Of a stretch of DNA of 64,000 bases, positions 1,792 through 60,361 are shown in pieces. The DNA comes from Bugula neritina (taxonomy: Eukaryota; Animalia; Bryozoa), in the NCBI GenBank assembly GCA_964035545.1, contig OZ037765.1, positions 35,054,080-35,118,079 on the forward strand. The letters run 5' to 3'. Numbering within the stretch: position 1 is the first letter of the stretch; every line of letters starts with the position of its first letter. The notes below the pieces were generated by a model that had not been told where the DNA came from, did no database searches, and was given only the letters and a program-made list of their open reading frames with translations. The translations under genes and the position numbers were made by a program.

Positions 1792-4700
1792 TTACTTCAA
1801 AGGTACTTTATCATGAAATTTAGGAAAAAAGAAAAGTTTCCTTAGATGAGTAAAAGAGCATTCTAGTCTGGCTGGTACATTTCCACCAACTGGTTCTCCT
1901 GTTTTCTTGCAATAAGCAATACTGACTCGTCTAACTCTATCTTGTATCTGTGAGTGTGCAGATACAATATTATGGCTATTAAATTGTTAAAAGAAACATT
2001 CAACAGTTGTCTACCAAAGGAGCAAAGCCAATATAATTACTAAGCTCGTATAATTAACCTTGTTGAAAGCATCTTTCAATAGACCATGTAAGTTTGGTAC
2101 ATTTAGTACCTTGTACCAATTCTAGAATACTCACCACTATAACTTATATAAACTTCTGCAAGTTCAAATGCAAAATGCATACTTCTAGGAAATAGCTGTG
2201 CAACTTTTATTACATGCATTATTTTATTTCGTATCTTAAATTTATGAATCATGAGTTCATTTTTCAAAATGTTTAATTTAAGTGCTTAAAAAATGCAAAT
2301 AAAAAGTACAAGTTTAAAAAAATACCCTGGTGCAAATTGACCACAGCCCCAGCTGTTTTGGCAAAACACATTTAATGACATTTTCATCGACATAGTGGTA
2401 AATGGGCTGGTTGTTTTTGGCAGATGGGTAGCACGCTGGCTGGCTGCAACTTTATACAATTCTGATTGGCTGGACTCTACATGACCAGCTAATGATTGTA
2501 TCTGATTGGCCTAATAATTCATTTGCATTTGAAAATGTAGAGTTTTATATAAGTTATAGTAGTGATATTTTAGGGTTGGTACACACCCCTTTTTTGGTTG
2601 AGTTTTATAGTCTGATCACGCTGTAGTCATCTACAACACTTCAGTGTATGGGGAAATTATTAGTATTACGAAATCTGTTTTGGCTTATATTGCTATGCTA
2701 GTTTTCTGACTTAGTTTTTCATCAACCATATGCAGGCTGTTCTAACTTGAGTGATTTCATCAAAGGTAGACATTACTTAGACCTTAGAACATCAAATCAA
2801 CCAGTGCTGTTACTTGGTTTTATTGCAAAGCAGTAGTGAGAGCATAGCACACTTGCACAGTCACCTAGCTGCAATGGCAGTGGCCACACTAAACTCACCA
2901 GTTTTATTAAAATATCTTATGTAAGGCACCTAAATACACTAGCCTAGTCTGTTAGTATGTAGAGCAGTAGCACAGTTACAGCAGTCACACCACCCCTCTC
3001 TATCCTGTCTACCAAGTACAGAGGTTGCAAAAATGATAATCATTTCATGATTTAGTTTTAAATCAATGCATATTACTGAATACATTCTCATAGTCTGATT
3101 ATTTTGTGCTTCAGCTTATTTTAATGTGATAATTTAAAAAATTGCTTCACATGCATATTACAAATGCATGAACCTACGATAACCATAAATTATTTGCTTG
3201 TGCACTCACTACTGTTTTATTTTAAATTTATATAGCAGTAGCTTTTTTAATCAATCACATATTAATCTGCAAGAGTTTAATTGCACAAATAATGTAGACA
3301 TTTTGTATAAAAATTAGTATTAACATGTAATGCCTTGCATGTGGGTCTATATTGCCAGTTGGTATCATCACCTATAATACCATGTTGATAACCCTTTCTT
3401 GTATACGATTTATTTAGCGAAACAGCATGATTATCTTACAAATGTACTGACATCAGCCATGGGACAATATAGTCTAGAGTCTAGACTCTAGAATCTAAAC
3501 TCTAGATTCTTTTAACTGTGAAGTAATCAGCCTCAAACTATTGCTGGATGAAGTGCCTACACTTAGCTGTGAAGCTACTGCAATAACATCAACAATTTTA
3601 CTAATGAGTTTTCAATACATGTTTTAGTCAGTCGGGTAAAATACAAAGGTTCTCTGGTATACGCTAGAATAAATGATGATTAAACATTGGATTTGATGAA
3701 CATTTTTTTCATATTGTGTGATGCAACATGATATTTACAGAGAAACCGCTGATTCCACTAAAACTGTAATGAAGGCATTATATTTCAACACTGACTGCAT
3801 ACAACAATGTTACCAACAGAATATTATCCAAAATAAGCATCGAGTCTGAGCTGCCATTTTATTTCACCCAAAAACCATTAATATCAGACTTTAGCTTACA
3901 AAGCATAGTGGTATAGCACATGCATATACAATAGCACACCAAAAAATTTTTTATAAAGTGCTACACTTTATTGGTTACCAAGGGTGGCTGCAGAAAGCAC
4001 AGCAGAATATTATAATCTTTTCTAAAAGAGGTGCAAACAGTAAGCTTACACCTCCAGGACTATTTAGGATATCAAGTCTTTTATGGGTTGATTGCTCTTT
4101 TAACCTGGATTCTAAGGATAGCAATTAATTTAGTTTAGAGTTACTGCATTCTAGTCAGTTGAAAATGGCCTTTCTTTCCAGGTGGCATGGCCAGGAAATA
4201 AGTAAATACTGTAAGAAGATCGCCATGGTATAGTAGAAATAGGTGTGCTCCGGAAGCACTATAGTGAAGTTTTAATGGCTGGCATATGGTATTGGATACT
4301 AGCCCTCAGAATGTTTTTGTCATCTTCCTGCCTCAATGGTGGTTGATGATTACTTTGAGTGAGGAAAAACATGTATTGAAAACTCATTAGTATAGCTTCA
4401 GAGCTAGGTGCAGATATTTCCTCAAACAATGACTTGAGACTGAGAAGCTCACATTAAATATCACTTAAAAATGAAGCAAGCTGCTAACAAAATTACTTCA
4501 TAGTTGAAAAAACTGGACTATATTGTCCTATGGCTGATGGCATTGCATTTGTGGGATAAACATGCTGTTTCACTAAGGAAATCATGTACAAACTGGTGAT
4601 GATACCAATTGTAACAGTATAAACTAGCATGCCAAGCACTACAGGTTAAAGCTCAGTTTTATGTAAATCGTCTATGTTGTCTATTGCTAAAAGCTGTGCA

Positions 4701-7700
4701 TTTTAACTCCTGCAAATAAATATGCAACCAAGTTGAAAAAATTACTGTTGTAATTTTTTTAAGTAAAATAATGGTGGGTACATAAGCAACTAATTTATGC
4801 TTAGCACATGCTTATACATGTGTTCGTCAGTGTGCTGTAAATATATGCTAGTGATGATAAATATGGTGCAGCACTGCCATTACAGTTCGCTGACTGTGCT
4901 ATGCTATTGCTACTGTTTTGCAATAGTAACAACAGTGTTTGATTTGCTGCACCTAAACAGTGTCTACCTTCGATGAAATCACCTAAGTTATATAGCTGCC
5001 TATGGTTTATTACAAACCAAGTCAGAAAACTGGCATAGAAATATAAGCCAAAACAGATTTCGTAATACTAATAATTTCCCCATACACTGAAGTGTTGTAG
5101 ATGACTACAGCGTGATCAGACTATAAAACTCAACCAAAAAAGGGGTGTGTACCAACCCTAAAACATCACCACTATAACTTATATAAAACTCTACATTTTC
5201 AAATGCAAATGAATTATTAGGCCAATCAGATACAATCATTAGCTGGTCATGTAGAGTCCAGCCAATCAGAATTGTATAAAGTTGCAGCCAGCCAGTGTGC
5301 TACCCATCTGCCAAAAACAACCAGCCCATTTACCACTATGTCGATGAAAATGTCATTAAATGTGTTTTGCCAAAACAGCTGGGGCTGTGGTCAACTTGCA
5401 CCAGGGTATTTTTTTAAACTTGTACTTTTTATTTGCATTTTTAAGCACTTAAATTAAACATTTTGAAAAATGAACTCATGATTCATAAATTTAAGATACG
5501 AAATAAAATAATGCATGTAATAAAAGTTGCACAGCTATTTCCTAGAAGTATGCATTTTGCATTTGAACTTGCAGAAGTTTATATAAGTTATAGTGGTGAG
5601 TATTCTAGAATTGGTACAAGGTACTAAATGTACCAAGCTTACATGGTCTAAGAACAGAACTTTTCTTTCAAGTATCATGTCTAGGAGAGTAGATTTAGGT
5701 AGACACAAAGGTAGCATGGGCATTATGGCATTTAGAGGTTAGTTATTGTTCTAGACTTCTAGTACACCAGCAGAGATCACCAGCAGAGATTTTATATGGT
5801 GAATCAGGACCATTCATTTGACAACTTACAATTTTAAACAATTCATCTATATCCCTGTGACAGCTGTGTCTGTAGAATGTAGCCACCAGTATTCTGATAA
5901 ACCAGGTACCATAATTCTCATTCCTACCAGCTCTATAACCTACAACACAACAATACTTATTCACGCCTTTTTATAGCATCAGATTCAAGGTGCTTTTTCA
6001 TCAAAACTTGGCTGTTGATACTTACTCTCCGTACTGGGTTTCACTACATAAAAATCATCTGCATCTAAGTAGGTAGTCTTGTTGAAGTCGATGTTTGGTG
6101 GAACATTTTCAGCCATGTTTGGTGGAACATTTTCAGCCATGTTTGGTGGAACATTTTCAGCCATGTTTGGTGAAACATTTTCAGCCATGTTTGGTGAAAC
6201 ATTTTCAGCCATGTTTGGTGAAACATTTTCAGCCATGTTTGGTGAAACATTTTCAGCCATGTTTGGTGAAACATTTTCAGCCATGTTTGGTGGAACATTT
6301 TCAGCCATGTTTGGTGAAACATTTTCAGCCATGTTTGGTGAAACATTTTCAGCCATGTTTGGTGAAACATTTTCAGCCATGTTTGGTGAAACATTTTCAG
6401 CCATGTTTGGTGAAACATTTTCAGCCATGTTTGGTGAAACATTTTCAGCCGCTAAAGGTTGGTGTTGAGTTGGTGCTGAAGAGGCTGTTGTTGGTAGTGA
6501 GAAGTTGACAGAGTTTTGTGTGTGTGCATCAATTCCCATATCAATTCTACCTGCAATAATACAAAGCTGGTATACTTATCCACTTACACACTCTCAATAA
6601 TACAAAGCTGGCATACTTATCCACTTACACTCTCTCAATAATACAAAGCTGGTATACTTATCCACTTAACACTCTCAATAATACAAAGCTGGTATACTTA
6701 TCCACTTACACACTCTCAATAATACAAAGCTGGTATACTTATCCACTCAACACTCTCAATAATACAAAGCTGGCATACTTATCCACTTACACACTCTCAA
6801 TAATACAAAATTACAGTTCTACTATTCACATGTTGAACAATAAAGGAGTGGTCTCACTTGAAATAATTTTGAGTTGGAATTAAAATGGAGCTACTTAAAT
6901 TGCTTAGCAAATAACTCCTATTATGCTAATAAAACCATCTCAAAGTTTAAATTTAAGATAGGTGCTTGTGCAACAAAATAGCAAAACTATCAAATATCTG
7001 AACACTAAGTTTATGAATCTGAATATTTGAGGAAAACATAATTTTAATTATAAATGCTTGTACTTTATTATGAAATTTTAGTTGTTTTGTTGAATTAATG
7101 GTAAATGCTAGATTGTAGTAATTAATAAAAGTATTAAATTTGCTTACTGCCAGAGCAGGCATGGAAAATGATGAGTTTGGGTTTTCCTCTCATGGCAGGA
7201 AATTTACTAGCTGAGAGTAAATCTTTGACTTCTGACAAGTTGACAGGCTTACAGTGTCTGTCATAGAAGATGTTTCCAGAAGTTCCGTGTGACATGATGA
7301 CTAGAATGAACATGCCTAGATCCTTGTGATCTCTGTGGGTGGTCTCTTTCCTCACTTCTGATAATATTTCCTGTTGGAATAATTTTTTCCATCAGGTGTG
7401 TAATAATATCAAAAGAAAATTTACGATAAATGAAAAATATTTTGGTATTTTTAAAACAAAATACAGTATTTTTCTGTAGACAAGAGATGCACCCAAAATA
7501 CAGTATATTTCTATAGACAAAAGATGCACCCAAAGAGTAAATTGGACTGCAGCAACTATGAATGCACCAGCACTAATTTAATCACCTTTTTACTTAAGTC
7601 AAAGAGAGGATCATCTTCATTAGCTACAATGAATCCCATGTCTTTGAACAGTTTACTGATATTGTAGTAGTCAATATAAGAACCATCTCGGGTTGCCTCA

Positions 7701-10700
7701 GTCAGTTCACTGCCATCATCCCGAAAGAATCTCTCATTGTTTATGATCATGACACGACCTCTAACAGGGTCACTCATCGCATAAACCTCCAAATAAATTA
7801 AACAGTTAAATTTACCTATCGAAATTTTGAATTCACTGAAACAACCTGTTTAAAGTGAACATTGTTAAACTCAGCAATAACTTGTCAGTTGCACACATGC
7901 ATTTATAACATTTAAAAAGTCTCATTTGGGCCCCATAATAAGTGTTAACAAAAATTCACCTCTAAATTTTTAAGTTGCCTTAAATATTGAATGCCAGTCT
8001 GAAAATTTCTACGTTACAATTATTGTTCAGTAATAGCCTCTAGTCAAATTACAAAATTTTTCTCAACATTTGCTGCTGCAACTTTTGCTAGTTGAACATG
8101 CCAGCGACTTAAGCTCACGATTCTCACTAGCACATGAAAAATTTGAAACCGCAATGAGATATAACCCAATATTCTATGAGTACTTAAATAAGAAGCAATT
8201 GAAGTGATTAAATAGAAAATTACTTGTCTGTGGTCATCAAACAACTGCCTAACTCGTTCATTGTTGGTAGGCCTTAGTTTCATGCCATCAACCATAGATA
8301 TGAAAGGTTCAAGGTCATCTTTAGTAAAATCAGCATATCCTTCCTCTTCTACATCAGAGCATTCACTGATGTTGTCATCTTCCATCTGGGTTTTAACAAC
8401 TTGCTGTGGTTTACCTTTAGCATACAATTTAATTCATCAGTATTAGCATCATGGTGATAATTAGGTTAAACAGTATAATTGTAACTATTTTATCATTTTT
8501 AGGCCTTTGAAGATGATGACAAACTGGAATAGACAATAGAACTTTTATGGGATGAGCTAGCCAAAGAGACCAAACATCAAGTAAGTTGAAGGAGCATGTG
8601 TTTAGAATAGATGAAGTCTAGAAACAAAATATCATTAAAAGTCCCCATATAGGTGTAGTCATGTGAATTAATGATATATAATGAATATTGTACCATTGTC
8701 ATTGAATGAATTTTGTTTCAGTTGGTTGACATGCTCCTTGATACTATGAGCTTCATCTCTGGAAAGTGGACCACCTGTTGCAAGACGAATAACATCAGCT
8801 TTTTCGTTGAACATAAGTAATGAAATACAAATGAATAATTAAAATTAATAAATAATTTTAGCACATACATGGATAAATCAGAGCACTTGGTATCTCCTCA
8901 TCATTGCATAAAGTTGTTGAAAACCCACTGCACAGCTGCACATTTTTTGGCTGATGCTTTAAAGAGCGAAGGCACCATTGGGGCCTCAACACTTTCTTTG
9001 GGCAAGTATGTCCAAGTAACAGACAGTGAGCACAAAAACTGGTAGTCACTGGTCTACTCGCTGGCCAGGTTTCCAAAACATTCTTTAAAATATTGTTTGC
9101 AGTTACAATGATTTTTTCCCACATTTTGCTGATATTGGCAGCATCAGATGAGACATAGAGCAGGATCTTTCTGTGCTTGTAGTCATGCATCAGTTGGGTG
9201 TAAATCCCATCCTGGTACACATTTGCTCCATTTCTTTTCACGTGCAACACAGCAAAATCATCAGGAAAAAGTTCCAGCAAACCAACAGTCATCTGATGGT
9301 AAACATATTGTGGAAGTGCCAATCCATTGAAATGAGTCTCAACTTTGAGGTGCATGTTCTTTTGTGAAGAGTCAAATGAGTTGTAGTACTTATTTGCAAA
9401 TGGTGGTATAATAAAGCATGGTTCCTTGAACTCTTCATATAAAGGACCATACAACAATCGGAATGTCTTGAGTAGACAAACTGCAATTCTCATATCAGTG
9501 GGACTGCTGAAGGAGGTTTCTGTTTTTATTAGATAGAGGAGAAGACTTTGCACCATCAGGCCTGTTTCAGAGAAATAGTTCACAAATTCTTCAAAATCTT
9601 GTTTTTCAATGCAAATCTCATCTTCTGAATAGTATGGCTGAAATTTTTCTATTCTTTTCTGCCATATGTCCTGTTCATGGTGGTAAAAGACACACAATAG
9701 TTTTGTGACCTCTTTTATTTTGTGGAATATGTACTGTTCCAAGGAGCCAATGTTTTCATACCACAAAACTTTCCCACAGTCATGCATGTACGTCAGAATG
9801 GTTTTCAATTGATTTTGTTCAATTTGACCAAGTTCTGCTTGCAATGCAGCCAGCGTCTCATCAATGGTACTGTATGCAGACTGCATGGACATAACCCTTT
9901 GATTGACTTCTTCCCACACTAGTGGGAGAGGTTTGACAAAATCATGACTACTTTCAAGGAGGGACTTCTTGATTAAGTCAAATATGTCATACTCATCATC
10001 TATTCCTACCTCATATATATTGCCACGAGGAAAAACCCCTTCAGGTGATTTGCTAAAATGCTGTATTTGGGCAAAATCACCTTCTAGTGCTTTTTCTTCT
10101 TCAAGAATTTTTTTGCACAGCTTATTGGAGACTTCAAGAAAGCATTTTTTTAAATTTTGAAACCTGACATTTTCAAACTTATCTTTGTGAGTAAAGATAA
10201 GCTTGGGTGCACTAAGAACTGGATTGGCCAGGTAAAGGTGTGACATGTAGTCAAATGCCAGCTTCCGGACAGCTTCATCTCTCGTTGATTCAGCTGAAGT
10301 TTGTTCATATTGTTGCATGTTCACTACAATCACTGGTATACAGTTTTGTCTCAGTGTTAGTTGATATGTTATATGGTAGACCTCCTGACCTCCCATATCA
10401 ATGAGACGAAGTGCTATGCCATCTACCTCTACCTCTTCAATGTTGAATACTTTTGTTATTTCACTTTTCGCGGCCTCTGGGCTCCTATTTGTTAAAATTC
10501 TTTTTCGGTCGGGATTTTGCAATGTTTTAATTAGACTAGTTTTTCCCGCCATTGTGTTACCCAACACAGCTATTGTAACAAATGGTAAGTTTTTACCACT
10601 ACCTTTAGCCATATCTTGGTAATACTGTCTTACAGCATTTATTCCTCTCCTGCATACTTCCTGTGGGGGAGAGTTCAGGTTTTTGCTTTCTTGGACATTC

Positions 10701-13700
10701 AGCATTAATAGTTCAGTCATGTCTAATATACCAGGATCTAAAGATGTCAAGTAATTGTTTCTGCTAATGTCCAGCTTTTGCAAACTCTTCAGTGTAAATA
10801 CACAAGAGGGTAAGCTGGTAAAGTTGTTCTCAGATAAGTCCAGGTTCCGTAACTTCTGAAGACTCTGTATGCTAAATAAAAATGTAAAAATGTTACATAT
10901 ACCCAGGTATTTTAATTGAAATTTTAGCTAAAAGTAAAGTCAGCAAAAATTTTACGTTGTCAAAAACCCATCAGAGGTGCCTAATATGGCTGCATTTTGT
11001 AGACACACATGAGATATACTACACTATCTTATAATTTGTTGATGCCTTTTTTTCAGTTTTTTCCATGCACTGCTTTTCCGATTTGCCTTGAATAATTAAT
11101 TTTGGACAAATCACCCATTTATCTGCAGCAGATTTTGATTTACATGTTCATTCATTCATTATATTTTTAACAATGAAAATGATGGGATATTTCAGATGTA
11201 ATAATTTTTTTCTCTTCTAAAAATTCAATATAATGGCACGAAGTTTACTCATTGTCATTTTTAGCATTAGTATTAGAGTGTGTAAATAAAAATTGAAGGT
11301 GTCGGTTCTGAAGTCTTCAATCAACATGATTTGGTTACAACAAAGTTAACAAATAATGTGCTTGTTTAACCTATGAACACCAAGGTCTTATGAACTTTGC
11401 TAAGATAACTCCCAAATTAGCCTCGTATAGCTGCAGCGCCAAAGAGGCTTCGCTTGTGTTTTTTTTCAGTTATACATTTTTTTCTTTCACTTTTGACTAA
11501 ATATAGCAAAACAAATCAAAAATGTGTAAAAGGAAGCTAATTTTTACTTTTCCTACAAAGTGTTTTAAATATATACATGTACATGTAGTTATTTAGTTAT
11601 TTCAACTACGGACCCTTTTAATTCTGTAGTTATTTCAACTATGGACCCTCTTAATTCTGTAGTTCTTTTAACTATGGACCCTTTTAATTCTGTAGTTCTT
11701 TTAACTATGGAACCTTTTAATTCTGTAGTTCTTTTAACTATGGACCCTTTTAATTCTGTAGTTCTTTTAACTATGAAACCTTTTAATTCTGTACTTTTAA
11801 CTATGGACCCTTTTAATTCTGTAGTTGTTTTAACTATGGACCCTTTTACAAACACAAGCTTGTGGCAAAATCTTGTTCTTCACAAACTTTTTTTTATAAG
11901 AATAAATTTTAAATTAACCTGAGTATCAGAACACTGACCTGTTTGGCAGAGTTGTAAGACCGCAGTTTCTCAAATGTAACTCTCTCAGGGATACCAAAGG
12001 AGCCAAAGCATCATCTAGCAGCCCTTCAGATAAATTGTTACCCGTCACATTCAAGAATTCAATATTCTTCAGGTGAAAGATACTGAAACAAAACACAATG
12101 GTGTATAAAGTTTGGTCAATATGATTACCCAATAGATTGTTGGTTTTTTAACCTTATTATGAAGCCACTTTGCCCCATCCTAAAAAAACGTATCCAGAAT
12201 ACTATTTCACCAGTTTTTTAGACATGTGTGGGTCTTTTTGCCTACTTGCATTCTCAAACTTTACGCTGATATAATAAGTATATTAGGGCTAAAAATACGA
12301 ATTTGAAATGATTTTTCAATGTTAGTACCAGTGCGCACACTAACTATGTTCAGCCCAGAGCCGGCTTAGAAAACTTTTGCTCAGTATGTTTGTAAGGCCT
12401 ATCTAAATCCACATGATCAGATATGATATTACTTCATCCTCCTCCCGATGTAGTAAGTCTGGCTTCAACAACCCCCTTCTCCGATGTGTAGTTCAGCTAA
12501 TACCTCATATCCCTTTTCTAAGCTGGTTTTAATAAATTCAGAAATTTTTATTTTGGACTCTCAGATTTTAAGCAGTTTTTGGAGAATATGCCGGCTAGTC
12601 TGGGCTCTCTCGATGAGGTTCTCATGCCTGTTCATTCCGTATTTCAATCGATTGTCATTAAGAGATTATATCTCATGTGGTTGATTCATATGTCATCTCG
12701 TCAAATCAAGATTTATAATAAAGATATAGATTTTAAAGGTATGCAGCTTCACAAGAACATTACAAACTTTGTTCAACTTTTTTTTGCAATAGTTGCACAA
12801 TAAAAACATCTGCAGCCACGTAGTTTTTTGATTTGCTTCATTGTGTTAGAGCCTCTATTTCTTTACAAAGCAAATGTTGAGCCAAGAGTTTTTGCATATA
12901 CCCTTTGATATTTAAACAGCTTTTATTTATATTGAAGCTTTTCAAATTCTCAAATTTTCAAACTAAACTTTTTTATTTTTTTTAATCTTGGAACTTGAAG
13001 CAATAAGATTTGCTCTCAATACAACAACTTCCTCTACCTTTAGTAGACTTAATTTTTTGTTGCTCTAGCATTGGTGGTCTTTTGAATAGTTACCTACTTT
13101 TTTAGCCCTCAATATTGTCTCCCGGTAGTAGTCATCTATAAGTGTTTATAATATATTTTCCCACCTATAACTTGTGATTTTATCTCAATAGCCTCCTCAC
13201 CTTGTCAAGTACTCAGCTGCTCATGAGTCTGTCAAAATCTTTTTTCTTGATGTAGTTTTTATATTTATTGATAGCTACACTCAAGCACTCCTTAGACTTG
13301 GGCATTCCATCAGCTTTATACCTAATTATATGTATGTAAACTTCTCCAAGGTTGGGAAAAGCAATTTTTTTCTTAATTTTTTCCACTTGAGCTTTTATCC
13401 TCTGACCATTGTCTCAGCTTCATACCTTGGTAGCACCAATTAAATGTCATGTTTTCATGTGACTGTTTCAGGCATTCTATATGCATTTCAGTGATGCATG
13501 TTTCATTATCATTTATGGCTTTAAACTTCCATTTTCTTATGTTTGTGCCAGTTATTTCATACACATTACCCATACACATTACCCATACACATTGCCCATA
13601 CACATTACCCATTCACATTACCCATACAAATTGCCCATACACATTACCCATACACTTTACCCATACACATTACCCATACACATTACCCATACACATTGCC

Positions 13701-16700
13701 CATACACATTACCCATACACTTTACCCATACACATTACCCATACACATTACCCATACACATTGCCCATACACATTACCCATACACTTTACCCATACACAT
13801 TACCCATACACATTACCCATACACATTACCCATACACATTACCCATTCACATTACCCATACACTTTACCCATACACATTACCCATACACATTACCCATAC
13901 ACATTGCCCATACACATTACCCATACACTTTACCCATACACATTACCCATACACATTACCCATACACTTTACCCATACACATTGCCCATACACATTACCC
14001 ATACACTTTACCCATACACATTACCCATACACATTACCCATACACATTACCCATACACTTTACCCATACACATTGCCCATACACATTACCCATACACTTT
14101 ACCCATACACATTACCCATACACTTTACCCATACACATTGCCCATACACATTACCCATACACTTTACCCATACACATTACTCATACACATTACCCATACA
14201 CATTGCCCATACACATTACCCATACACATTGCCCATACCCTTTTCTCATAAAAAAGGTCAATGATTCCTAAAAATCATATAGTTCTAATGATTTTCCGCA
14301 TATTGTTTGAAACTGCAGTTGGGATTTTGCTTTTTTACCAGTCAGCACAATGTTTTGTATATTAAGAAAGATAAGCATGCCTGCTTTTAGTTCTGATTTT
14401 TCTCTGAATTGTTATGCTAATGCAAAAAAACCCATAATTTATGTATTTTTCTAGCTTTTAAATGCAGCAATGATGTGGTTTTTAGAGTAGAGATTATTGC
14501 GGTCCTAATCTCATTTTTATGGGAGACCTTTTTTTCAGGACATAATCAAATGACCAACTCCTGAGCATTTGGCCATCAAACTAATCTACAGCTCTTTCAG
14601 ATACTTCATCTTTTTTCCTAATAAGTTAAAAATATATTGTCAAGTAAGCCAAATAGCTGCTAGACCCTATGACCACTTTTGTCTGTGATATTCTCCAATG
14701 TTACATTCTGCTCATAAGCCTACACCATTCATAGAAAGGATATCTGAGTTGACTGTGCCATCTATCATAACTGAAATACAAGCTCGTAGTAGCAACTCCA
14801 TATGATCTTATAGTTTATGTCTCATTTCATCAGCTTGGTAATCTAGAATAATTTTTTAATGTCAAGAAAAACTATTTTTACCATTATTTTCCATAAGTAG
14901 CTATGTATAGCCAAGTTTTTGTTATAATAATAATGTGTACTACTGTGAAAACTACTGCCCCCCCCCCCCCCCCCATGGCGAAATGAGCAGCTAGTGTGCT
15001 AACCTTCACACTATAGGCTCTACTGGAGCATCACAACCCCACTGTTACAACTAATCTTTATTGCTGGTTGAATTTTAATTTTTCCTATGCTCAATATTTC
15101 TTTGACTTTTGATATTGGCAGCAGGTATATACATTCTCTTACTTAGTGGTACTGAGTGCCTAAATTTAAAGCTTTTAAATCATCCTAGTGATTAATATGG
15201 TATCAGCCAAGAAGAGAATGTGACGCAAGTTAACAATTATCAGTAATAATTCTACCTCCACTGACCCAGGGCGATATCATGAGCAGGTAAGCTTAAACTA
15301 TTATCAGCAAGTTAAAGGTTTGTGTGGGCAGAGCTTAATTGTAGGAGTAGAAAACTTTAAAACTGCATTCAGCTGATTGATGGCCGTATGTTTCTGAATA
15401 TTTTAACATCACAGGATACAACTAGTTCATCCTGCTTATTACAAAACCAAGTCAATGCTAAATGAAACAGCTGTAATACTATTTGTAGATGGGCTGCACC
15501 AGACTATGGAAACCATTGACTGCTAGGAAACATTAAGTGGACCATCAAGTGACTCATTAAGAATGTGGTATAGCAATCCTAAGTCAGGGATGGTGCATAT
15601 GAAGACCACAAGGTGTGCTCATATATGGCTATCTATGCAGTGGGGAGAACTTTAACTAGAAGGACCTGGCTAACATTCTGAACACTAAGTTAAATAAGTC
15701 AATTGAAGAACTAAATTTACATGTGCTATTAAATTGTCTAGCTCTAAAACTGAATAAATTTATTACAAATTTACAATGGAGAGATTATTGGATCCAGCAA
15801 GTTGTTGGGAAGATGGCCAGAACAATGTCTACTAGTTTGCTCTCACCTGTTTGGTAGAGTCGTCAGGTTACAGTCCCTCATAGTCAGCTCTCTCAGTGAT
15901 TGTAAGGATGTGAACATGTAGTCAGGCAGGCCTCCAGATAGCTTATTCCCCGATATATTCAATACTTGAAGATTCTTGAGCAAGGTTATACTGTAACATA
16001 AAACATAGCAGAATACACTGTAATATAACACATAGCAGAATACACTGTAATATAACACATAGCAGAATACACTGTAATATAACACATAGCAGAATACACT
16101 GTAACATAAAACATAGCAGAATACACTGTAATATAACACCTAGCAGAATATACTGTAATATAACACATAGCAGAATACACTGTAACATAGCACATAGCAG
16201 AATATACTGTAATATAACACATAGCAGAATATACTGTAATATAACACATAGCAGAATATACTGTAATATAACACATAGCAGAATATACTGTAATATAACA
16301 CATAGCAGAATACACTGTAATATAACACATAGCAGAATATACTGTAATATAACACATAGCAGAATATACTGTAATATAACACATAGCAGAATACACTGTA
16401 ATATAACACATAGCAGAATATACTGTAATATAACACATAGCAGAATATACTGTAATATAACACATAGCAGAATACACTGTAATATAACACATAGCAGAAT
16501 ACACTGTAATATAACACATAGCAGAATACACTGTAATATAACACATAGCAGAATATACTGTAATATAACACATAGCCCACTTATGCTCTAGCATAGCATA
16601 CGACAAGATTTTTCAATAATGCAATACTTTAATAAGTGATTGTGTTCAGGAGTTGTGTTAGGAGACCCCATCTCTAAGTAAAAGTGTAGTCACATCAATA

Positions 16701-17131
16701 TAATGTCACTTGTGTTGGTGTAGTAACAGGAGTCACTGAAACTTGTCTAATAACAGTCCAGTGACAGTCTAATAACAGTTCTAGTAACAGTCTAGTAACA
16801 ATCCAATAGCAGTTCTGTAAGCCTAGGGCCGCACTGTGCGTATTTTCGCATGCGAAAATTTAAATTACAAGTAGCAAAGGTGTCCACTGTGCGCGTTGAG
16901 AAAACATTGACACTTGTCGCTCTGCATTCTCAACGCAAGTGTGAATCGTCTTTGTGGTCGTCACCTAACTGGCTGGTAGTTATTTAGCGAGCCCAATTCT
17001 TTTATTTTAGTGCTACATTCCAGTAAATTGCGTTTTATTGAAAGCGAGTGCGATTTAAAAATGACAGCTTTATTTATCACGCATCACTGACGCTACAGTG
17101 GACACCTTGGCTACCTGTGGTTTCAATTTTC

Positions 17132-17216
<85 letters not shown>

Positions 17217-20122
17217 ATCAATTGTAATTACTTAGATGTAGAACTAGACTTGTAATAAATGGTAATAATGTAATAACCTAAATTTGCTTCCCTCTTGTAC
17301 ACTACACAAGTACAAGTAGTGTATCTTCTATCATTCTACTATATTATTACTCTAGTGTTGAGGTTGTAAGAGTGAGTGTAGTGAATGAAATGATCATCTG
17401 TTAAACACACCTGTTTGGTAGAGTCGTCAGTTCACAGCCCTCCATGTGCAGCTCTTTCAGAGATAGTAAGGATGTGAATGTGTTGGAGAACAGGTGGGTA
17501 AATACTCTGTTCCCAGAGATGTTCAGCACAACGAGCTTCCTCAGAAGAGATAGGCTACAAAATACACCTCACCTTATCTAACTGATCATAAGTTGCTACT
17601 ATAGAATATACTATAGAATATACTATAGAATATACTATAGAATATACTATAGAATATACTATAGAATAGAATAGATGGTTTGTATAACATGGAATAATAT
17701 ACATTAATTAATGCAATTATTACTCAGGGAGATGGTTACATACAAGTACACAATTAGTTAAATGTATTGTATGTGTAATAATCCAATAATTCTATTTGTT
17801 TCATTGAAAATAAAAGCCTAGTACAACATGATGCGTAGTTAGTAGTTGCTGCCAGGACTATAACATTCAGTGAGAATAATGTTTATCCTTTGTGATACAG
17901 GGGAAGATAATATTTCTTTACGATTTTAAATACTTAGTTTAGATTAGAATATTGCAGTCTAATATTGAAATGACTAGCAATAGCTGCTGCAGAAAAAAAG
18001 CTAAATGATACTAAGACTAAATTTGGCCAGCAAATAAGGGAATCACTAACCAACCCTCTACCCTGAGCAGTATATTGAGTGCTGCTACTCTCAGCTGAAG
18101 GTATGTTTACTAATGTGCACACAACTCCATGAAGTATATACAGCCACACTGACCTACATAGTGAATAGAAAACTTTGTACCTGTTGAAGTTGGCATTTCT
18201 ACATAAACTTTTCAGTCTCAGATGTGTGAGATGAGGAAAGAGAGTGTTGAGATTTGGGGGAAATTCACCCTCCAGTATGACATGAGTCACTGCATGACGT
18301 CTGCTTATGTCACTGAGCTCTCCTACAGTGTAGGCAGATGTTATATTCCTCACCCAGTTGCGATCGGCTGCATGGACGATGTGCCTGTTGAACCAAACCT
18401 TGTACCTCCCTACAGTTTATATAAGACAAAGTATACCCCAGTGTAGACCTACTAATGCAGGCTAGTGACTTGGAGCTACCCATGGTATTGTCCCATCACG
18501 CAGACAAGTATAATGGTCTAGGTATTCTAGGGTCACACATGTGTTCAATTCACAAGAGATTCCCATTTAATCTAATTTAACTAGTTTATATTTAATCATG
18601 AGCACCTATAAGATGGGCTGGGTGGTACACCTAGCAGGTAAAATTTTCCCTGGAAATAGGCATAAAACATAAATGTTTATAGTATCGGAAAATTATTAGT
18701 TGGTGAAACATTCATGTGTATTTTATTCTAGAACTTGTCAGAGCTAGACTGTAGTTTTCTCCATGTTTTACTCAGTTTACATTATCAACAGGAATATTAT
18801 TAAACTACTGCTGAGCCAAGAGGCATTGTTTTTCATTTAGTAAATAAGTTACATTAGCTGCACGAACTCCGAACTCTGTGTTGCAACATGTTTTTGTCAG
18901 TAAGAGATATTTGGTGCAAGTTGATGATTACCAAACAGTTTGAATGAGGAAACAAGATGTGAAGTGATGGCCACACAGTTCCTACTAGCACAGCACTGAA
19001 CACTGAATATTACAGCTTTTAACTTACTATATTTAGACTGGGTTATACACCAACCTATAACACAATGATTCCATTAGTTTTGGTATACATTCTATATAGT
19101 ATATACTGTATAGTATGTACTGTATAGTATATACTATATAGTATAATATACTATATATAGGGACTTCTTGTAGATAAGAATTGGTTCACTGACTCCACGA
19201 AGATGGCATATAAATAATATCATAAACATACAAATTACTACTTGATAATATCCGGATTCGTGACACTTGAGAGGTCAATGAATCAGGAGAAGGCAAAGGT
19301 CATCCCTTAGCTCAATGACCTTTGCATCAACTCTGATTGTTTTTCTTGGTAATGCGGTGGAAATGTTTCACTGTGTTATGAATATACAGGAAATAGAAAC
19401 AGTGATGACTTGTGGCTCTTGACCTAAATTTTCACAGTTAGCTGAGAAAATGGAGTATTTTTGAGAAGTGAGTTCCATAAAATAGTTCAAAGATTTGAAT
19501 GTATAGTTGGAGTCTGGTAGTGCATATATCTCAATATTTTAGTTCTGACCACTAGAACTCCTTAAATCAGTACTCTTTCAGATTGGGGCCAGTTAAGCAA
19601 TGCTATATGATGTTATAGTCAGATTTTAAGACACCTAAGTCAGGGGTAACACCACGTTGTGTTATATTAGTAGTTGTGTAGATTATAATCTCCAAAGAGT
19701 TATAGTATAAAGATTGTGTACATATATATCTACCATTCTCACAATATTATTCAACATTTGGAAGGTTTTTAAGACCTCCTTCTCCGTACAGTCACTGTTC
19801 AACACTTGCAACACATCCTCAAAGTGTTGATAGAATTAATATTATAACAATTATGGAGTATTACCACTGAAATATATTTACACAACTACTACTAGCTGTT
19901 GTTATATATATTGTCGTTATCAGTAAAATGCGGAGAAATCAGAAATAATTTGCAAACTTAAATGTTCATAGTATAAACATGCAGTTTCCAAAATCTTAGC
20001 TATTCACTGCTTCAGTTTCTATTTATAGAAATTGAATGAAAAACTGAGAACATTGTAATTCACTCACCTCTGGTAGCCGAGAGTTGAGCAGGATGGCCAG
20101 CTACCAACTTACGTTGAGACAT
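1792..20122 (-). CDS. LRR-ROC-COR (MFHAS1-like Roco) / caspase (peptidase C14) fusion protein, ~1401 aa, 13 coding exons
   Basis: Phase-consistent GT-AG exons: 20068-20122, 18181-18409, 17411-17554, 15847-15990, 11939-12082, 8869-10871, 8694-8774, 8224-8414, 7586-7786, 7148-7370, 6026-6550, 5830-5939, 1792-1947 (4206 nt, no internal stop). LRRs of the LxxLxLSxN type. ROC motifs GNTMAGKTS, DMGGQ, THKD. COR motifs LPLVW, LTYMHDCGKVLWY, YIFHKIKEV, ending IPSALIYP. Caspase motifs VYAMSDPVRGRVMIINNERF, RDGS, MSHG, GKPKLIIFHACSG, DDFYVV, RNENYGTWFI, LRKLFFFP. Confidence 0.85.
2080..5650. mobile_element. Giant foldback / non-autonomous DNA element with very long inverted arms, in the last intron of the Roco-caspase gene
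   Basis: TAGACCATGTAAG at 2080 is the reverse complement of CTTACATGGTCTA ending at 5650. Arms 2080-~2690 and ~5040-5650 are near identical. Diverged inverted similarity continues to ~3625 / ~4366. No transposase ORF seen. Confidence 0.85.
6091..6450 (-). repeat. Coding minisatellite, 15 x 24 bp encoding AENV(S/P)PNM, in the caspase inter-subunit linker
   Basis: Lies inside the open exon 6026-6550, between HACSG and the DDFYVV small-subunit motif. Confidence 0.85.
6555..6809. repeat. ~41-bp tandem repeat (about 6 copies) abutting the splice acceptor at 6551
   Basis: caataatacaaagctggtatacttatccacttacacactct units. Confidence 0.9.
11590..11848. repeat. 33-bp intronic minisatellite
   Basis: aactatggacccttttaattctgtagttctttt units. 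Confidence 0.9.
13558..14240. repeat. 13-bp intronic minisatellite (cccatacacatta)
   Basis: Direct tandem copies; source of the spurious HTHYPY ORFs. Confidence 0.95.
15988..16576. repeat. 27-bp minisatellite whose unit contains the splice acceptor of an LRR exon
   Basis: Minus-strand unit ctatgtgttatattacagtgtattctg; the terminal copy provides the TTACAG acceptor of exon 15847-15990. Confidence 0.9.
16824..17132. mobile_element. MITE-like element with ~40-bp imperfect inverted repeats, right end abutting (TA)n
   Basis: cgaaaatttaaattacaagtagcaaaggtgtccactgtgcg (~16853) pairs with cgctacagtggacaccttggctacctgtggtttcaattttcg (to ~17132). Confidence 0.6.
17134..17211. repeat. (TA)n microsatellite
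   Basis: Pure dinucleotide run. Confidence 0.98.
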
Positions 20123-22951: not shown

Positions 22952-27158
<4,207 letters not shown>

Positions 27159-29189: not shown

Positions 29190-29437
29190 CTATGTTCTAC
29201 ACTTCTATGTTCTACAGTTCTATGTTCTACAGTCTATGTTCTACACTTCTATGTCCTACAGTCTATGTTCTACAGTTCTATGTTCTACAGTTCTATGTTC
29301 TACAGTCTATGTTCTACAGTTCTATGTTCTACACTTCTATGTTCTACAGTTCTATGTCCTACAGTCTATGTTCTACACTTCTATGTCCTACAGTCTATGC
29401 TCTACAGTTCTATGTTCTACAGTTCTATGTTCTACAG
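29190..29437 (+). repeat. 14-15 bp minisatellite copying a splice acceptor (ctatgttctacag) in the ELP5 5' UTR intron
   Basis: The last unit ends TTCTACAG|GTCTAGG, just upstream of the ATG at 29464. Confidence 0.85.
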
Positions 29438-29463
29438 GTCTAGGGTCTATCGAGAAACAAGTC

Positions 29464-30723
29464 ATGCTTGAAGACTTAATCAACAACTTGAGGTGTGAGT
29501 CCTCTCTACTTATCAAAGACTCTTTGAGGAAAAGTGGGGCGTGTCTTATAAAGTCGTTGACCAATCAGGCTTTGAGTCAACAGAAACCTCTCCTTTATAT
29601 AAACACAGAACCTCTATTCGGCAACAGACATAGCCTTGGCTCTCTAGGAGTCCAGAATGTCGACGTGTTTGGCCAGTATGACTCGCTAAAGGAGAGAATT
29701 ATGAGCAGCGTCAGCTCTGCTAACACCGTTCTGGTCTTTCCTTCCATCTCGCTTCTCCTTCTCAGCTACTCTGTTGGGCGCTTTGCCAAGCTGTTACGGG
29801 CACTTCGGGAAAGTGATAGGGTCAACTCTGTTATAGCGCTGATGCACACAGATGTTGTATTGAATGAAGAGGTCGTGGACAGGCTAGACTACTTTTTTAG
29901 TTCAATAATTCACGTTCTACCGCCCGAATCTGAACTCTCTGTGTACTACGCTCAAGTGAAATGTTTGAGACGCAAATCTAACGGTAAACTGGAAACTTCC
30001 GAGGAATATTTTACACTGGATGACTCATGCAGTTTGAAGCTGGTCCACTCGTCGTCTTCTGCAGTAGTGAGGTCGTACACTCAGTCTCAGTCTGGTGATG
30101 TTGTCTCTAGCCTCACTTTCAACCTGTCCCTCAGTGATAAAGAGCGAGAGGCTAAGAATAGACTCCATCTTCCCTATCTCAAGAAAGACTCGGAGAAACA
30201 GGCACTGCTTTCACAGACCCACAATGGAAGGTAATAACAGCTTCAGCCACTACATAGCACTACATAGCACTACATAGCACTACATAGTACTACATAGCAC
30301 TGCATAGCACTACATAGTACTACATAGCACTACATAGCACTGCATAGCACTGCATAGCACTACATAGCACTACATAGCACTACATAGCACTACATAGCAC
30401 TACATAGCACTACATAGCACTACATAGCACTACATAGCACTACATAGCACTATATACTCAACATAGTACTATATTCTCAACATATCGGTGATAGTTTGGT
30501 CACCAAGAGAGATAACTCTCATAATTTCTTCTTTTTTGTCTGATATAAAAATTAGTCAATAATTTCTTGTAACTTCATTTTCTCTAATTTCAGTTCTGGA
30601 CGGCCATTAATTTCTATCGGTGATGAGTCATCGCAGACAAACCCCGGAGGGAAGATTTACTATCACTACGACGAGGCCGATGACTTTGATGATGAAGACC
30701 CTGATGACGATTTAGATATTTGA
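29464..30723 (+). CDS. ELP5: Elongator complex protein 5, 2 coding exons, ~298 aa
   Basis: Exons 29464-30230 and 30594-30723. Signature LTFNLSLSDKEREAKNRLHLPY and C-terminal GKIYYHYDEADDFDDEDPDDDLDI*. Confidence 0.92.
30248..30452. repeat. 10-bp repeat (tacatagcac) in the ELP5 intron
   Basis: About 20 copies. Confidence 0.95.
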
Positions 30724-36200: not shown

Positions 36201-39200
36201 TGAAGAGTAAGTAACAGAGTAGGTAACAGAGTAGGTAACAGAGTAGGTAATAGAGAAGGTAACAGAGTAGGCAATAGAGTAGGTAACACAGGAGGTAATA
36301 GAGTAGGTGGACACATGTGACTCACCAGGAAGTCTGTCTATAGGCATCAGGGCTGACTCAGCAACCGACTTCACTTCCAACCAGACTTTCTCCCTGGCGA
36401 CAACTCTCTCAAGGTACTTGACAAGTTCTTGCAGCTGCTGTACTATCATGAATGAGAAGAGCCTGTCTAGCCCTGTCAGCCCCATGACATCCACACTTTG
36501 CTACCAAAGATTATATATACTTATAGTGTAGCTCCACACTCTGCTACCAAAGATTATATATATTTATAGTGTAGCTCCACGCTGTGCTACCAAAGATTAT
36601 ATATATACTTATAGCGTAGCTCCACACTCTGCTACCAAAGATTATATATATTTATAGTGTAGCTCCACACTCTGCTACCAAAGATTATATATATACTTAT
36701 AGCGTAGCTCCACACTCTGCTACCAAAGATTATATATATTTATAGTGGTCAGGTCAGGATCTAATAACCTGCTACTGGTACCATGTAATCCAGTACCACC
36801 TGTTTCATGATCGAGCCGCTGGCGACTAAACCAGTGTACACCCGCTGCCTTGCGGGATGTGTTTCAAATAAACACAAAGGCTATGGGAGGTGGTCCCTAT
36901 ACAAACACAACGGGTCTGTGAACACTCGTCAGGAAACTGAAAGGGCGAATGAATTCCATGAATCAACGGCCATTCACTGCAACTAGGTATGTTTTCCAGT
37001 CGTCGAGGCTCCCTTGCCACTGGATCCATACATGCCTAGCCAAGCTTACAGAGTATCGTTTCGTGCGACAATGCTCTATACCACGCACAGCTTCTGCTTG
37101 CAACCCTCCTCAAGCCCTGCGGCGATTGGAGCGTAGCGACGGGAACAGGGAAGTGAAGCCTGGAAGTTTCCAGTTACAAACCAGCACGTAGGCGGTAGAG
37201 ATTTATCAGTCGCTCAACTTAGGACAGGGAGCAGTATGGTTGTTCGGTAGTGATCTCTATGACTGAGCAGTCCTTTTTAGGACCCACTCTGCTCACCTCA
37301 ATCAGAGGAGAGGGCTAGAAAAGGTGCCCCAAACATAGTCTGCTCCCAACTCAACCTGGCTGGATTACCGCGTCCAGCGGGTTCACCTCTTTGCGGTCAG
37401 AAAATACAAATGAACATAGCAACCTGGAATGTACGGACAATGATGGACAATGATAAATCAAACAGACCTGAGAGAAGAACGGCTTTCATAGCTCGTGAAC
37501 TCAGAAGACTAAATGTAGACATAGCAGCCCTTCAGGAAACTCGCTTAGCTGATGAAGGGCAGCTCACGGAAATTGGTGGTGGGTACACTTTTTTCTGGAG
37601 AGGGAAACCAGCTGATGAACAGAGAGTTCATGGGGTTGGTTTCGCTATCAAGAATGAGGTTGTGAGGAAACTCGACCAGCTACCAGTGGGAATCAACGAC
37701 AGGATGATGACTCTCCAACTAAACCTACGCCGCAACAGGAAAGCAACATTGATTTCAGCATATGCACCGACATTGCTTGCTGATCATCAGGAAAAGGAGC
37801 AGTTCTACTCCAATCTAGATATGGTTCTATCAGGGATCCCCAAGAGTGCGAAAATCATGGTCCTTGGAGATTTCAATGCTCGGGTTGGAAAAGATCACCA
37901 TGTGTGGAAAAAGATAATTGGTAAAGATGGGACTGGGAAGCTAAATAGCAATGGGGAAATACTGCTCACCAAATGTGCTGAACACTCCTTGGTAATCACA
38001 AACACTCTTTTTAGACAGAAAGACCGACGCAAGACCTCATGGAGACATCCCAGATCTGGCCACTGGCACCTTATCGACTACATCATTGTCAAACAACGGG
38101 ATGTGCAGGATGTGTGTATAACCCGAGCTATGGACCTATCTGATGCTTGCTGGACAGACCATCGACTGATTCTGGCAAAAATGAACATATGTATTCATCC
38201 AAAACAAATGAACAGGAAAAGAAAGCAGACAAAAATAAATCTATCGCTGCTCAACCAGCCAGAAATAAAGCAGAGCTTCCAAAGTGAGCTCACAGAGAAT
38301 ATCCAAGATATTGATATAAATTCTACTCATGGCAGCTGGGAAGTTCTGAGAGATTCGATCTTGAAAACATGCCACTCAACCCTGGGTAAACCAGAACGAA
38401 AACATGAAGATTGGTTTGATGACAACGAACAAGAAATAAACGAGCTCATAAAGGAGAAACGCCATGCTTTCAGCTTATGGCACCAAGACTATAGAAATGT
38501 GGAAAAAAGGGAACATTATCATAAAATGAGAAGGAAAGTACAGGCGAGAATAAGGACAATAAAAAATGACTGGTGGATCCGAAAATCTGAGGAGCTTCAG
38601 AGACTTGCTGAGACAAACAGTAGCAAAGAGTTCTTTTCCGCTACGAAGAGATTGTATGGCCCAATTTTTGGAGGATGTGGGCCAATAGCTTCCAAAGATG
38701 GTTCCACAATACATAAGGGGAAAGATGAGATCAAGGGCAGATGGGCTGAACATTTCTCAGAGCTGCTTAACCAAGACACTATGGTAGATGAGAAGACCTT
38801 AGAATGTCTGCCACAACTGTCAATACTGACCCACCTAGCCGAACCCCCAACGATTGACGAACTTGAGAAAGCATTATCCATGACTAAGTCAGGAAAAGCT
38901 GCCGGACCGGATGGAATACCTGGAGAGATTTTTAAAGGTGGTGGGCTAGAATTGAACAGAAAATTGCTGGAGCTCTTTCAGCTGATTTGGGAAAAAGAAT
39001 CACTTCATCCTGATCTGAAGGATGCTAATATTGTAACTCTTTACAAGAAGGGTAACAGAGCCGATTGTGGAAACTATAGGGGTATCTCTCTGCTATCCAT
39101 TGCTGGAAAGCTTCTGGCGAGAATAGTTAGTTTTAGACTTGGCCAATTGACAGAGAGATGCCTACCAGAGAGCCAATGTGGCTTCAGACCTTACCGAGGA

Positions 39201-59963: not shown

Positions 59964-60361
59964 AACACAAAAATATTAAGGCAAGAAAGTTCAAGCAGCT
60001 GATTTAAGTTATTTTACGATTGCAAATAAAATATAACTCACAAATTAATTTAACAAAATATCAAAAGTAATACACTTTCATGTAATTAAACAACATATAT
60101 CAGATTTGTTAGGGCTAGTATTAACAAACAGTTTTTGTTCTATTTAACATCATGCATGACATAACTAACTAACACTAACAATACTTACAGTTAAACAATA
60201 TCTTTTGAGCCACAACTTGAGCAACTACATTATTATCAATATGATATTATTTTTGAAGTAATTTGTGGAATTCAGTTCACAACAAATACAATTGCAACAA
60301 TGCTAACAATATTTTACTGTAATTATTGTTTTTTCCAATAAAATTAGCTACAAGCATTTTG

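What the first reader, a model, noticed from the sequence alone, without database searches (positions are those of the whole stretch)
1792..20122. Roco GTPase fused to a caspase: a possible one-chain sensor-switch-protease (LRR-ROC-COR-caspase)
Seen: 13 exons splice in consistent phase into one 4206-nt ORF. It runs LRRs, ROC (GNTMAGKTS/DMGGQ/THKD), COR, a ~90-aa acidic linker (exons 8694-8774 and 8224-8414), then caspase large and small subunits with both catalytic residues (SHG, HACSG). The ORF-track stop at 8858 is bypassed by the donor CCA T|gtatgt. No CARD/DED-like prodomain is recognisable. Known: the COR (LTYMHDCGKVLWY...YIFH, ending SALIYP) resembles MFHAS1, which as I recall ends soon after ALVYP. 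Roco proteins dimerise through COR in a nucleotide-dependent way, and initiator caspases are activated by induced dimerisation. Inference: COR could replace the death-fold platform, so LRR sensing and a GTP/GDP cycle would directly gate caspase activity, like an inflammasome in one polypeptide. I do not know of a described animal protein with this architecture, but I could not search.
Basis: partly seen in the sequence, partly recalled or inferred. Interest (0 to 1): 0.92.

Follow-up and report, generated by a model that had tools for sequence, protein, structure and literature searches.

The report
Bryozoan LRR-Roco GTPase fused to caspase
This moss-animal gene really does splice a variable leucine-rich-repeat surface, an LRRK2-type GTPase switch and a caspase protease into one message; it is one of at least 56 such genes in a genome with almost no detectable NLR receptors, so the family may be an untested one-chain route from sensing to cell death.

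Summary
Confirmed. Thirteen GT-AG exons give 4206 nt and 1401 aa: LRRs, ROC-COR, an acidic linker and a caspase with His and Cys. RNA contigs from four studies carry the joints from COR into the caspase large subunit. The genome (Bugula neritina or close kin) has at least 66 such ROC-COR exons; at least 56 of 65 paralogues have a caspase downstream. Watersipora and amphioxus gene models share the architecture. Family LRR exons are hypervariable on the concave face (dN/dS about 2). ROC-COR trees reject caspase types as clades, and this copy is a mosaic: an old front half (dS 1.4-1.9) on a recently shared caspase (dS about 0.45). NACHT and NB-ARC are almost undetectable in the genome. The architecture is not unprecedented: papers list bacterial LRR-ROC-COR-caspases, amphioxus 'LRRs-caspase' and one annelid ROC-caspase. 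I found no paper on the bryozoan expansion. Most likely a single-chain innate sensor-caspase gated by Roco self-association. Activity, ligand and nucleotide direction are untested; known Roco data hint that GTP may be the off state. The scan found this family before at other loci of this genome (62 notes).

The parts
20068..20122 (-). Exon 1 as proposed (ATG, phase-1 donor GTGAGT); unproven
   Evidence: In frame; no paralogue match among scored hits; outside the RNA stretch laid
18181..18409 (-). Exon 2, family-specific N-terminal module leading into the LRRs; no Pfam hit
   Evidence: 59 matches in the genome; DNA conserved in over 20 paralogues; weak match to a Watersipora N-terminus; no Pfam family
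17411..17554 (-). Exon 3, 144-nt phase 2-2 LRR cassette (two repeats)
15847..15990 (-). Exon 4, 144-nt phase 2-2 LRR cassette
11939..12082 (-). Exon 5, 144-nt phase 2-2 LRR cassette
   Evidence: RNA loose end at 10873 matches its 3' end with 2 differences
8869..10871 (-). Exon 6 (2003 nt): last LRRs, ROC GTPase (G1-G4 motifs), COR-A, COR-B, C-terminal Cys/His cluster (possible metal site)
   Evidence: Pfam; AlphaFold pLDDT 89, pTM 0.88; Foldseek LRRK1, LRRK2, CtRoco; atlas MFHAS1 TM 0.82; motif conservation
8775..8868 (-). 94-nt intron holding the in-frame stop at 8858-8860; spliced out
   Evidence: Skip of 94 in 4 of 4 runs; one retained-intron contig in X4 at depth 254 against 1388; donor position kept in all 21 copies while read-through tails differ
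8694..8774 (-). Exon 7, start of the COR-caspase linker
   Evidence: RNA joints; predicted helix in the relative
8224..8414 (-). Exon 8, acidic linker, low-confidence or disordered in the relative, no death fold
   Evidence: RNA joints; no Pfam hit
7586..7786 (-). Exon 9, caspase large subunit start, with the first S1-pocket Arg (RDGS)
   Evidence: Peptidase_C14; RNA joints
7148..7370 (-). Exon 10, caspase catalytic His1092 (SHG) and Cys1136 (HACSG)
   Evidence: Peptidase_C14 E 4.8e-10; aligns to caspase-3/6; RNA
6026..6550 (-). Exon 11, inter-subunit linker and small-subunit start
   Evidence: RNA loose end from exon 10 reads into it; 3' end conserved in paralogues
6091..6450 (-). 15 copies of a 24-nt coding repeat (8-residue unit), 99% matched, not seen in the sampled paralogues
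5830..5939 (-). Exon 12, caspase small subunit with the second S1-pocket Arg
   Evidence: Peptidase_C14; 86-89% identical in type-A paralogues
1792..1947 (-). Exon 13, caspase C-terminus and stop, after a 3.9-kb intron
   Evidence: 67-83% identical to paralogue exons that lie closer to exon 12; matches the Watersipora C-terminus

Best explanation
A functional member of a large bryozoan family of single-chain, MFHAS1-type Roco proteins whose C-terminal effector is a caspase, acting as intracellular innate immune or danger sensors. SHOWN: one spliced message joins LRR, ROC-COR and caspase; GTPase and catalytic motifs are intact; family LRR cassettes diversify on the concave face while ROC-COR and caspase are under purifying selection; front halves and caspases have been re-paired between paralogues. 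INFERRED: the LRRs bind a foreign or damage ligand; this shifts the ROC nucleotide state and Roco self-association; paired COR modules bring two flexibly tethered caspase domains together and activate them by proximity, in place of a CARD/DED platform. For the direction I favour (about 55:45) a GTP-bound monomer at rest and a GDP or empty dimer as the active form.
For: RNA joints in four studies. At least 66 ROC-COR exons; caspase exons downstream in 20 of 20 fetched paralogues and in at least 56 of 65 overall. Independent spliced models in Watersipora, Bugula and amphioxus. Concave LRR positions dN/dS 2.0 (bootstrap 5-95% 1.1-3.5) against 0.38 elsewhere, 18 paralogue exons. ROC 0.19, COR 0.21-0.24, caspase exon 0.16-0.18. 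AU test rejects caspase type A (p 2e-43) and type B (p 5e-4) as clades on the ROC-COR tree. NACHT one partial match, NB-ARC none, CARD four. No death fold in the linker. GTP monomerises CtRoco, and loss of GTP raises MASL1 toxicity.
Against: No activity, ligand or dimer was tested. The pentapeptide is HACSG: the conserved Gln is His, which may weaken or change the S1 pocket. The bootstrap 2.5% bound of the LRR ratio is 0.98, and the exons are not independent. The NACHT/NB-ARC blank comes from an exon-by-exon search and may miss split or divergent genes. Dimerisation mechanisms differ among Roco proteins. No expression data after infection were seen.
Confidence: 0.6

Rival explanations
1. The fusion is real and active, but ROC-COR restrains the caspase in cis. 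Ligand or nucleotide exchange opens the LRR-ROC hinge and frees the caspase, which dimerises by itself or is cut loose at the acidic linker.
For: GTP causes a large LRR-ROC hinge opening in CtRoco; ROC inhibits the kinase of DAPK1; the linker is long, acidic and flexible; the caspase scores best against effector caspase-3, whose domain dimerises constitutively (the last point from own knowledge).
Against: A tether of about 90 residues with low model confidence gives no sign of a fixed ROC-COR/caspase contact (pTM 0.67); free exchange of caspase types that are only 46% identical argues against a co-evolved inhibitory interface.
Confidence: 0.17
2. Sensors of self or non-self or of tissue state in colony biology (allorecognition at colony contact, polypide regression, symbiont control) and not pathogen receptors, using the same chemistry.
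For: Expansion and LRR hypervariability fit allorecognition equally well; the gene is present in RNA sets of four unrelated studies with no challenge on record; bryozoans cycle polypides by programmed degeneration (own knowledge).
Against: Parallel expansions in solitary amphioxus carry other conflict effectors (GT4, OTU, Death), as do the bacterial systems, which points to anti-invader use.
Confidence: 0.13
3. This copy is a weak or non-proteolytic scaffold or decoy (cFLIP-like) that pairs with active paralogues.
For: Gln-to-His in the pentapeptide; a 120-residue repeat inserted in the inter-subunit linker; the candidate cleavage Asp after the catalytic Cys reads Glu in the RNA contigs; one sampled paralogue has Tyr for the catalytic Cys (L014).
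Against: His and Cys are intact; exon 10 has zero amino-acid change against L004 and L013 despite dS about 0.2; HACSG is shared by 9 of 10 type-A copies; both S1 arginines are kept.
Confidence: 0.08
4. Two adjacent genes (an MFHAS1-like gene and a caspase) joined only by read-through or by a modelling error.
For: A retained-intron contig exists in one run; no single contig spans from COR to the catalytic Cys.
Against: One 2308-nt contig runs from exon 5 into exon 8, further contigs join 8/9 and 9/10; same order in 20 of 20 paralogues; RefSeq models of another genus are fused.
Confidence: 0.02

Closest known systems
Amphioxus LRR-ROC-COR-caspase models (e.g. C3XQ16/BRAFLDRAFT_67388) and the 'LRRs-caspase' proteins of Zhang et al. 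2008, PMC2575513
   Same: Same domain order with an intact caspase; proposed there as a direct link from pathogen recognition to apoptosis.
   Different: The paper does not mention ROC-COR, and I could not match its model numbers. Amphioxus keeps QACRG and swaps caspase with Death, GT4 and OTU effectors. Its ROC-COR is only about 23% identical and forms a separate clade.
Bacterial LRR + AP-GTPase + COR + variable effector conflict systems (Kaur et al. 2021, PMC8195603)
   Same: Same architecture, including listed LRR+AP-GTPase+COR+CASPASE proteins, multi-copy and with exchangeable effectors.
   Different: This is an intron-rich animal gene with an animal-type two-subunit caspase and an MFHAS1-like ROC-COR. 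The same supplement lists a sponge protein with ROC-COR and caspase, but with DED and TRADD-N between them.
Human MFHAS1/MASL1 and other Roco proteins (LRRK1/2, C. tepidum Roco)
   Same: LRR-ROC-COR fold and G motifs.
   Different: MFHAS1 has no enzymatic effector after COR and is single-copy (copy number from own knowledge); here a caspase occupies the place of the LRRK2 kinase.
Owenia fusiformis caspase with a ROC pro-domain (PMC11463336)
   Same: ROC and caspase in one lophotrochozoan protein.
   Different: A single gene, no LRR or COR reported, no family; no bryozoan was examined; homology not tested here.
Brown-algal LRR-ROC-COR genes (PMC11378527)
   Same: Expanded family with exon-encoded LRR cassettes under diversifying selection, proposed as immune receptors.
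   Different: No caspase effector; one LRR per exon there, two per 144-nt exon here.
NLR inflammasomes and Apaf-1/caspase-9
   Same: Sensor, nucleotide switch and proximity-activated caspase as a logic (inferred here).
   Different: Small GTPase with COR in place of a STAND ATPase; no CARD, DED or adaptor; one chain.

Membership tests
Roco proteins | ROC GTPase domain directly followed by COR | tested here: met
   Pfam Roc E 1e-7 and weak COR-A; model aligns over about 700 columns with LRRK1, LRRK2 and CtRoco, E down to 3e-24
Roco proteins | Intact G1-G4 nucleotide-binding motifs | tested here: met
   P-loop GK[ST], switch-I Thr, DxxG and T[HK]xD present and 90% or more conserved across 70 rows
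Roco proteins | GTP binding and hydrolysis; nucleotide-dependent dimerisation | not testable with these tools
   Only single-chain models could be made
MFHAS1/MASL1 subfamily | ROC-COR nearest to MFHAS1, no kinase | tested here: inconclusive
   Best atlas match MFHAS1, TM 0.82; RefSeq names relatives MFHAS1 homolog; no vertebrate MFHAS1 or LRRK row in the tree
MFHAS1/MASL1 subfamily | Protein ends shortly after COR, with no enzymatic effector | tested here: not met
   About 495 further residues with a caspase are spliced on
Caspases (peptidase C14A) | His-Gly and Cys dyad, large and small subunit | tested here: met
   caspase fold modelled with high confidence in the Watersipora relative
Caspases (peptidase C14A) | QACxG pentapeptide and Asp-selective S1 pocket (Arg, Gln, Arg) | tested here: inconclusive
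   Both Arg kept, Gln replaced by His (HACSG); Watersipora and L011 keep QACSG
Caspases (peptidase C14A) | Proteolysis after Asp | not testable with these tools
   Needs an assay
Initiator caspases | CARD or DED prodomain | tested here: not met
   No Pfam hit in exons 2 and 8; one helix and a low-confidence linker between COR and caspase in the relative
NLR / STAND receptors | NACHT or NB-ARC ATPase | tested here: not met
   The switch is a ROC GTPase
Amphioxus LRR-ROC-COR-caspases | Same domain order | tested here: met
Amphioxus LRR-ROC-COR-caspases | Common origin of the fusion | tested here: inconclusive
   Bryozoan ROC-COR is one well-supported clade apart from amphioxus, where caspase-bearing rows are mixed with other effectors; caspases 26-29% identical; no outgroup caspases, so no test
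Bacterial AP-GTPase conflict systems | Prokaryotic host and gene neighbourhood | tested here: not met
   Spliced gene between animal housekeeping genes

The most novel reading that the evidence does not exclude
Cheilostome bryozoans have largely lost NLRs and Apaf-1 and replaced them with dozens of single-chain LRR-ROC-COR-caspase receptors. Recognition is diversified by two-repeat LRR cassettes, effectors (two active caspase types and a dead one) are re-paired by recombination, and the Roco nucleotide cycle gates the caspase directly. This would be a GTPase-based inflammasome equivalent and a natural protease read-out of Roco dimerisation.
Probability: 0.35. Interest if true: 0.88.

Novelty: new variant of a known kind. 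Interest (0 to 1): 0.67.

Why it matters
It would show an animal lineage routing intracellular sensing to caspase activation through a Roco GTPase and not an NLR or Apaf-1 ATPase, the same design that bacteria and amphioxus appear to use. It also makes an open question testable. How the ROC-COR nucleotide state controls self-association and a C-terminal effector is still disputed for LRRK2. A caspase is a simple proximity reporter in that position, so GDP versus GTP and COR mutants can be read out as cleavage.

Tried and rejected
Two separate genes: rejected by RNA joints and paralogues. A conserved Roco-only isoform with a prenylation-like tail from the retained intron: rejected, read-through tails differ among 21 copies. 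A hidden death fold in the linker: none by Pfam or model. An upstream myristoylation-type first exon, suggested by several Watersipora models starting Met-Gly: no convincing candidate up to 29300. Other LRR, ROC or caspase exons in the window: none. A caspase-region search among long proteins found only Watersipora fusions and one ankyrin-caspase, but that search needs shared exact words. Paper searches pairing bryozoa or Bugula with caspase, LRR or NLR terms gave nothing. The model numbers of the 2008 amphioxus LRRs-caspases could not be read. Searches were frame or size slips, corrected. No caspase tree was built, for lack of outgroup sequences with a reference.

Full report
Observation. The gene is on the minus strand. 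Boundary checks gave 13 exons, 4206 nt and 1401 codons, no internal stop and GT-AG at all 12 introns. Exon 1 is the only in-frame ATG exon within about 5 kb upstream of exon 2, but has no outside support. Scripts before label exons differently: E4 = exon 5, E5 = exon 6, and so on to E12 = exon 13. The search with the joined protein was left out; the joined model was translated once in a local script only to check the frame.

Domains. Pfam finds LRR, Roc and weak COR-A in exon 6 and Peptidase_C14 in exons 9, 10 and 12. An AlphaFold model of exon 6 is confident (pLDDT 89, pTM 0.88). It matches LRRK1, LRRK2 and C. tepidum Roco over its whole length, and its best atlas neighbour is MFHAS1 at TM 0.82. 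G1-G4 residues are nearly invariant in 70 relatives, as are three Cys and one His at the end of COR; the spliced exon 6/7 codon supplies a further conserved Cys, so a metal site is plausible but inferred. The caspase is animal-type, best scoring against caspase-3, -6, CED-3 and -9.

Transcription. Contigs of four runs from four studies cover the exons and little of the introns. They skip exactly the 94, 279, 437 and 215 nt introns between exons 6 and 10. One 2308-nt contig runs from exon 5 into exon 8 with 36 differences in exon 6 (1.8%), while the nearest paralogue is 72% identical in DNA, so it belongs to this locus. A second contig joins exon 8 (no differences) to exon 9. Loose ends read on into exon 11. 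Caveats: these are assembled contigs, RNA status is a guess for three runs, no single contig spans COR to the catalytic Cys, and exon 10 pieces may include close paralogues.

Organism and family. A Bugula neritina GenBank protein of this family (KAF6024315.1, named CASP8) matches the genome at 91-96%, so the source is B. neritina or close kin (inference). Exon 6 has at least 66 full-length matches at 59% identity or more, clustered on C1 and C6. All 20 fetched paralogues have caspase exons downstream on the same strand. Pairing of hit lists plus these loci gives at least 56 of 65, a lower bound because the caspase list was cut. Three caspase types occur: SHG with HACSG or QACSG, THG with E[TVA]CSG, and one copy with Tyr for Cys. 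Watersipora subatra RefSeq has at least nine fused models labelled MFHAS1 homolog or uncharacterized. Pfam often misses their ROC, which may explain why the family went unnoticed.

Signs of a recognition role. Upstream LRRs come as 144-nt phase 2-2 cassettes in variable number. In 18 paralogue cassettes the a priori concave positions give dN/dS 2.0 (bootstrap 5-95% 1.1-3.5, 2.5% bound 0.98) against 0.38 for the rest. ROC, COR and the catalytic exon give 0.16-0.24. This is a simple pairwise count on non-independent sequences, so it is suggestive only. The window's own three cassettes were left out of that count and are more divergent. A genome search found one partial NACHT match, no NB-ARC and four CARD matches. 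The lead came from an earlier scan note and was retested here; exon-wise searching limits its force.

What is special about this copy. Its exon 6 is about equally distant from all 20 paralogues (67-71% aa, dS 1.4-1.9), yet its caspase exons are close to type A (pooled dS 0.42-0.49 for seven of nine; exon 10 identical in protein to L004 and L013). Conversely ROC-COR is as similar between A and B carriers as within them, while A and B caspases are 46% identical. On the exon 6 DNA tree, AU tests reject type A and type B as clades, with or without this copy. Front halves and caspases therefore have different histories, through module exchange or gene conversion; the data do not say which half moved. 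Introns do not align with those of paralogues, so the event is old or limited to exons. This copy also has a private 15-unit repeat in the inter-subunit linker. It sits among housekeeping genes and is the outermost close copy on its side of the C1 cluster.

Mechanism. The full-length Watersipora relative folds as LRR-ROC-COR, one helix, a low-confidence tether and a caspase, with no death fold. Established: initiator caspases are activated by proximity (own knowledge; chemically induced dimerisation is cited in PMC2575513), and Roco proteins self-associate in a nucleotide-dependent way (PMC6320773). Inferred: ROC-COR replaces the adaptor platform. The direction is not the obvious one. GTP makes CtRoco monomeric (PMC11052575), and loss of GTP raises MASL1 toxicity (PMC3995007). 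I therefore slightly favour a GTP-bound resting monomer and activation as a GDP or empty dimer. None of this was tested.

Comparison with what is known. LRR+AP-GTPase+COR+caspase is listed for bacteria, and a sponge protein has ROC-COR, DED, TRADD-N and caspase (PMC8195603). Amphioxus LRRs-caspase proteins were proposed as shortcuts to apoptosis (PMC2575513). My searches show at least eleven amphioxus models with LRR-ROC-COR-caspase, next to ones ending in Death, GT4 or OTU; that these are the 2008 proteins is likely but unverified. One Owenia ROC-caspase was reported, and that paper does not mention bryozoans (PMC11463336). Bryozoan ROC-CORs form their own clade, so parallel origin is plausible but untested. 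The library lacks most subscription papers, so absence of a description is provisional.

Verdict. A real, expressed, intact gene. It is a Roco protein and a caspase by sequence and fold, but not a typical MFHAS1, initiator caspase or NLR. The architecture has been glimpsed before; the bryozoan expansion, LRR diversification, effector re-pairing and near absence of NLRs appear undescribed. New variant of a known kind, interest 0.67. The scan noted the family at other loci of this genome; those notes were not counted as support.

Noticed in passing
window 8506-8580 and 8722-8772 (+ strand); G000:C1:35051865-35051893: Two RNA runs show a + strand GT..AG skip (8581-8721, consensus donor and acceptor), and a loose end that maps 2.2 kb before the window start: probably a spliced antisense transcript across the caspase half of the gene. 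A genomic deletion allele is not excluded.
   Followed up: partly
window 6520-6550 (exon 11 start): All four RNA runs read Glu where the genome has Asp at a candidate self-cleavage site just after the catalytic Cys.
   Followed up: no
L014 (G000:C1:32581046-32591045): Paralogue with a third caspase type in which the catalytic Cys is Tyr: a pseudo-caspase; its ROC-COR is sister to that of an intact type-A copy.
   Followed up: partly
G000:C2:9943461-9945862 (-): A CARD match lies 1.8 kb upstream of a strong Roc/small GTPase match on the same strand; possibly a CARD-GTPase gene.
   Followed up: no
G000 small contigs C66, C101, C110, C160, C42, C204, C307 and others: Rab-like genes read through many TAA/TAG codons: probably ciliate contamination in the assembly.
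   Followed up: no
Amphioxus proteins P0161-P0203: One LRR-ROC-COR chassis carries caspase, Death, GT4-conflict or OTU effectors, singly or combined, much like the bacterial AP-GTPase systems.
   Followed up: partly
Watersipora P0151, P0156, P0025: Several models start Met-Gly with Ser or Cys nearby, a possible N-myristoylation signal for membrane targeting; not present in the proposed exon 1 here.
   Followed up: partly
window 22955-24901 (-), 29236-30231 (+), 37410-40595 (+), 47906-48394 (-): Neighbours: GOLPH3-like (GPP34), Elongator subunit Iki1/Elp5, a LINE-type endonuclease-reverse transcriptase ORF of 1062 aa, and a strumpellin exon.
   Followed up: no
window 2106-2680 and 5100-5650: A stretch of several hundred bases appears twice in inverted orientation within the last intron, seen by eye; probably a mobile element.
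   Followed up: no
window 59016-59963 (-) and 60326-61927 (+): Two long ORFs (316 and 534 aa) without Pfam match.
   Followed up: no
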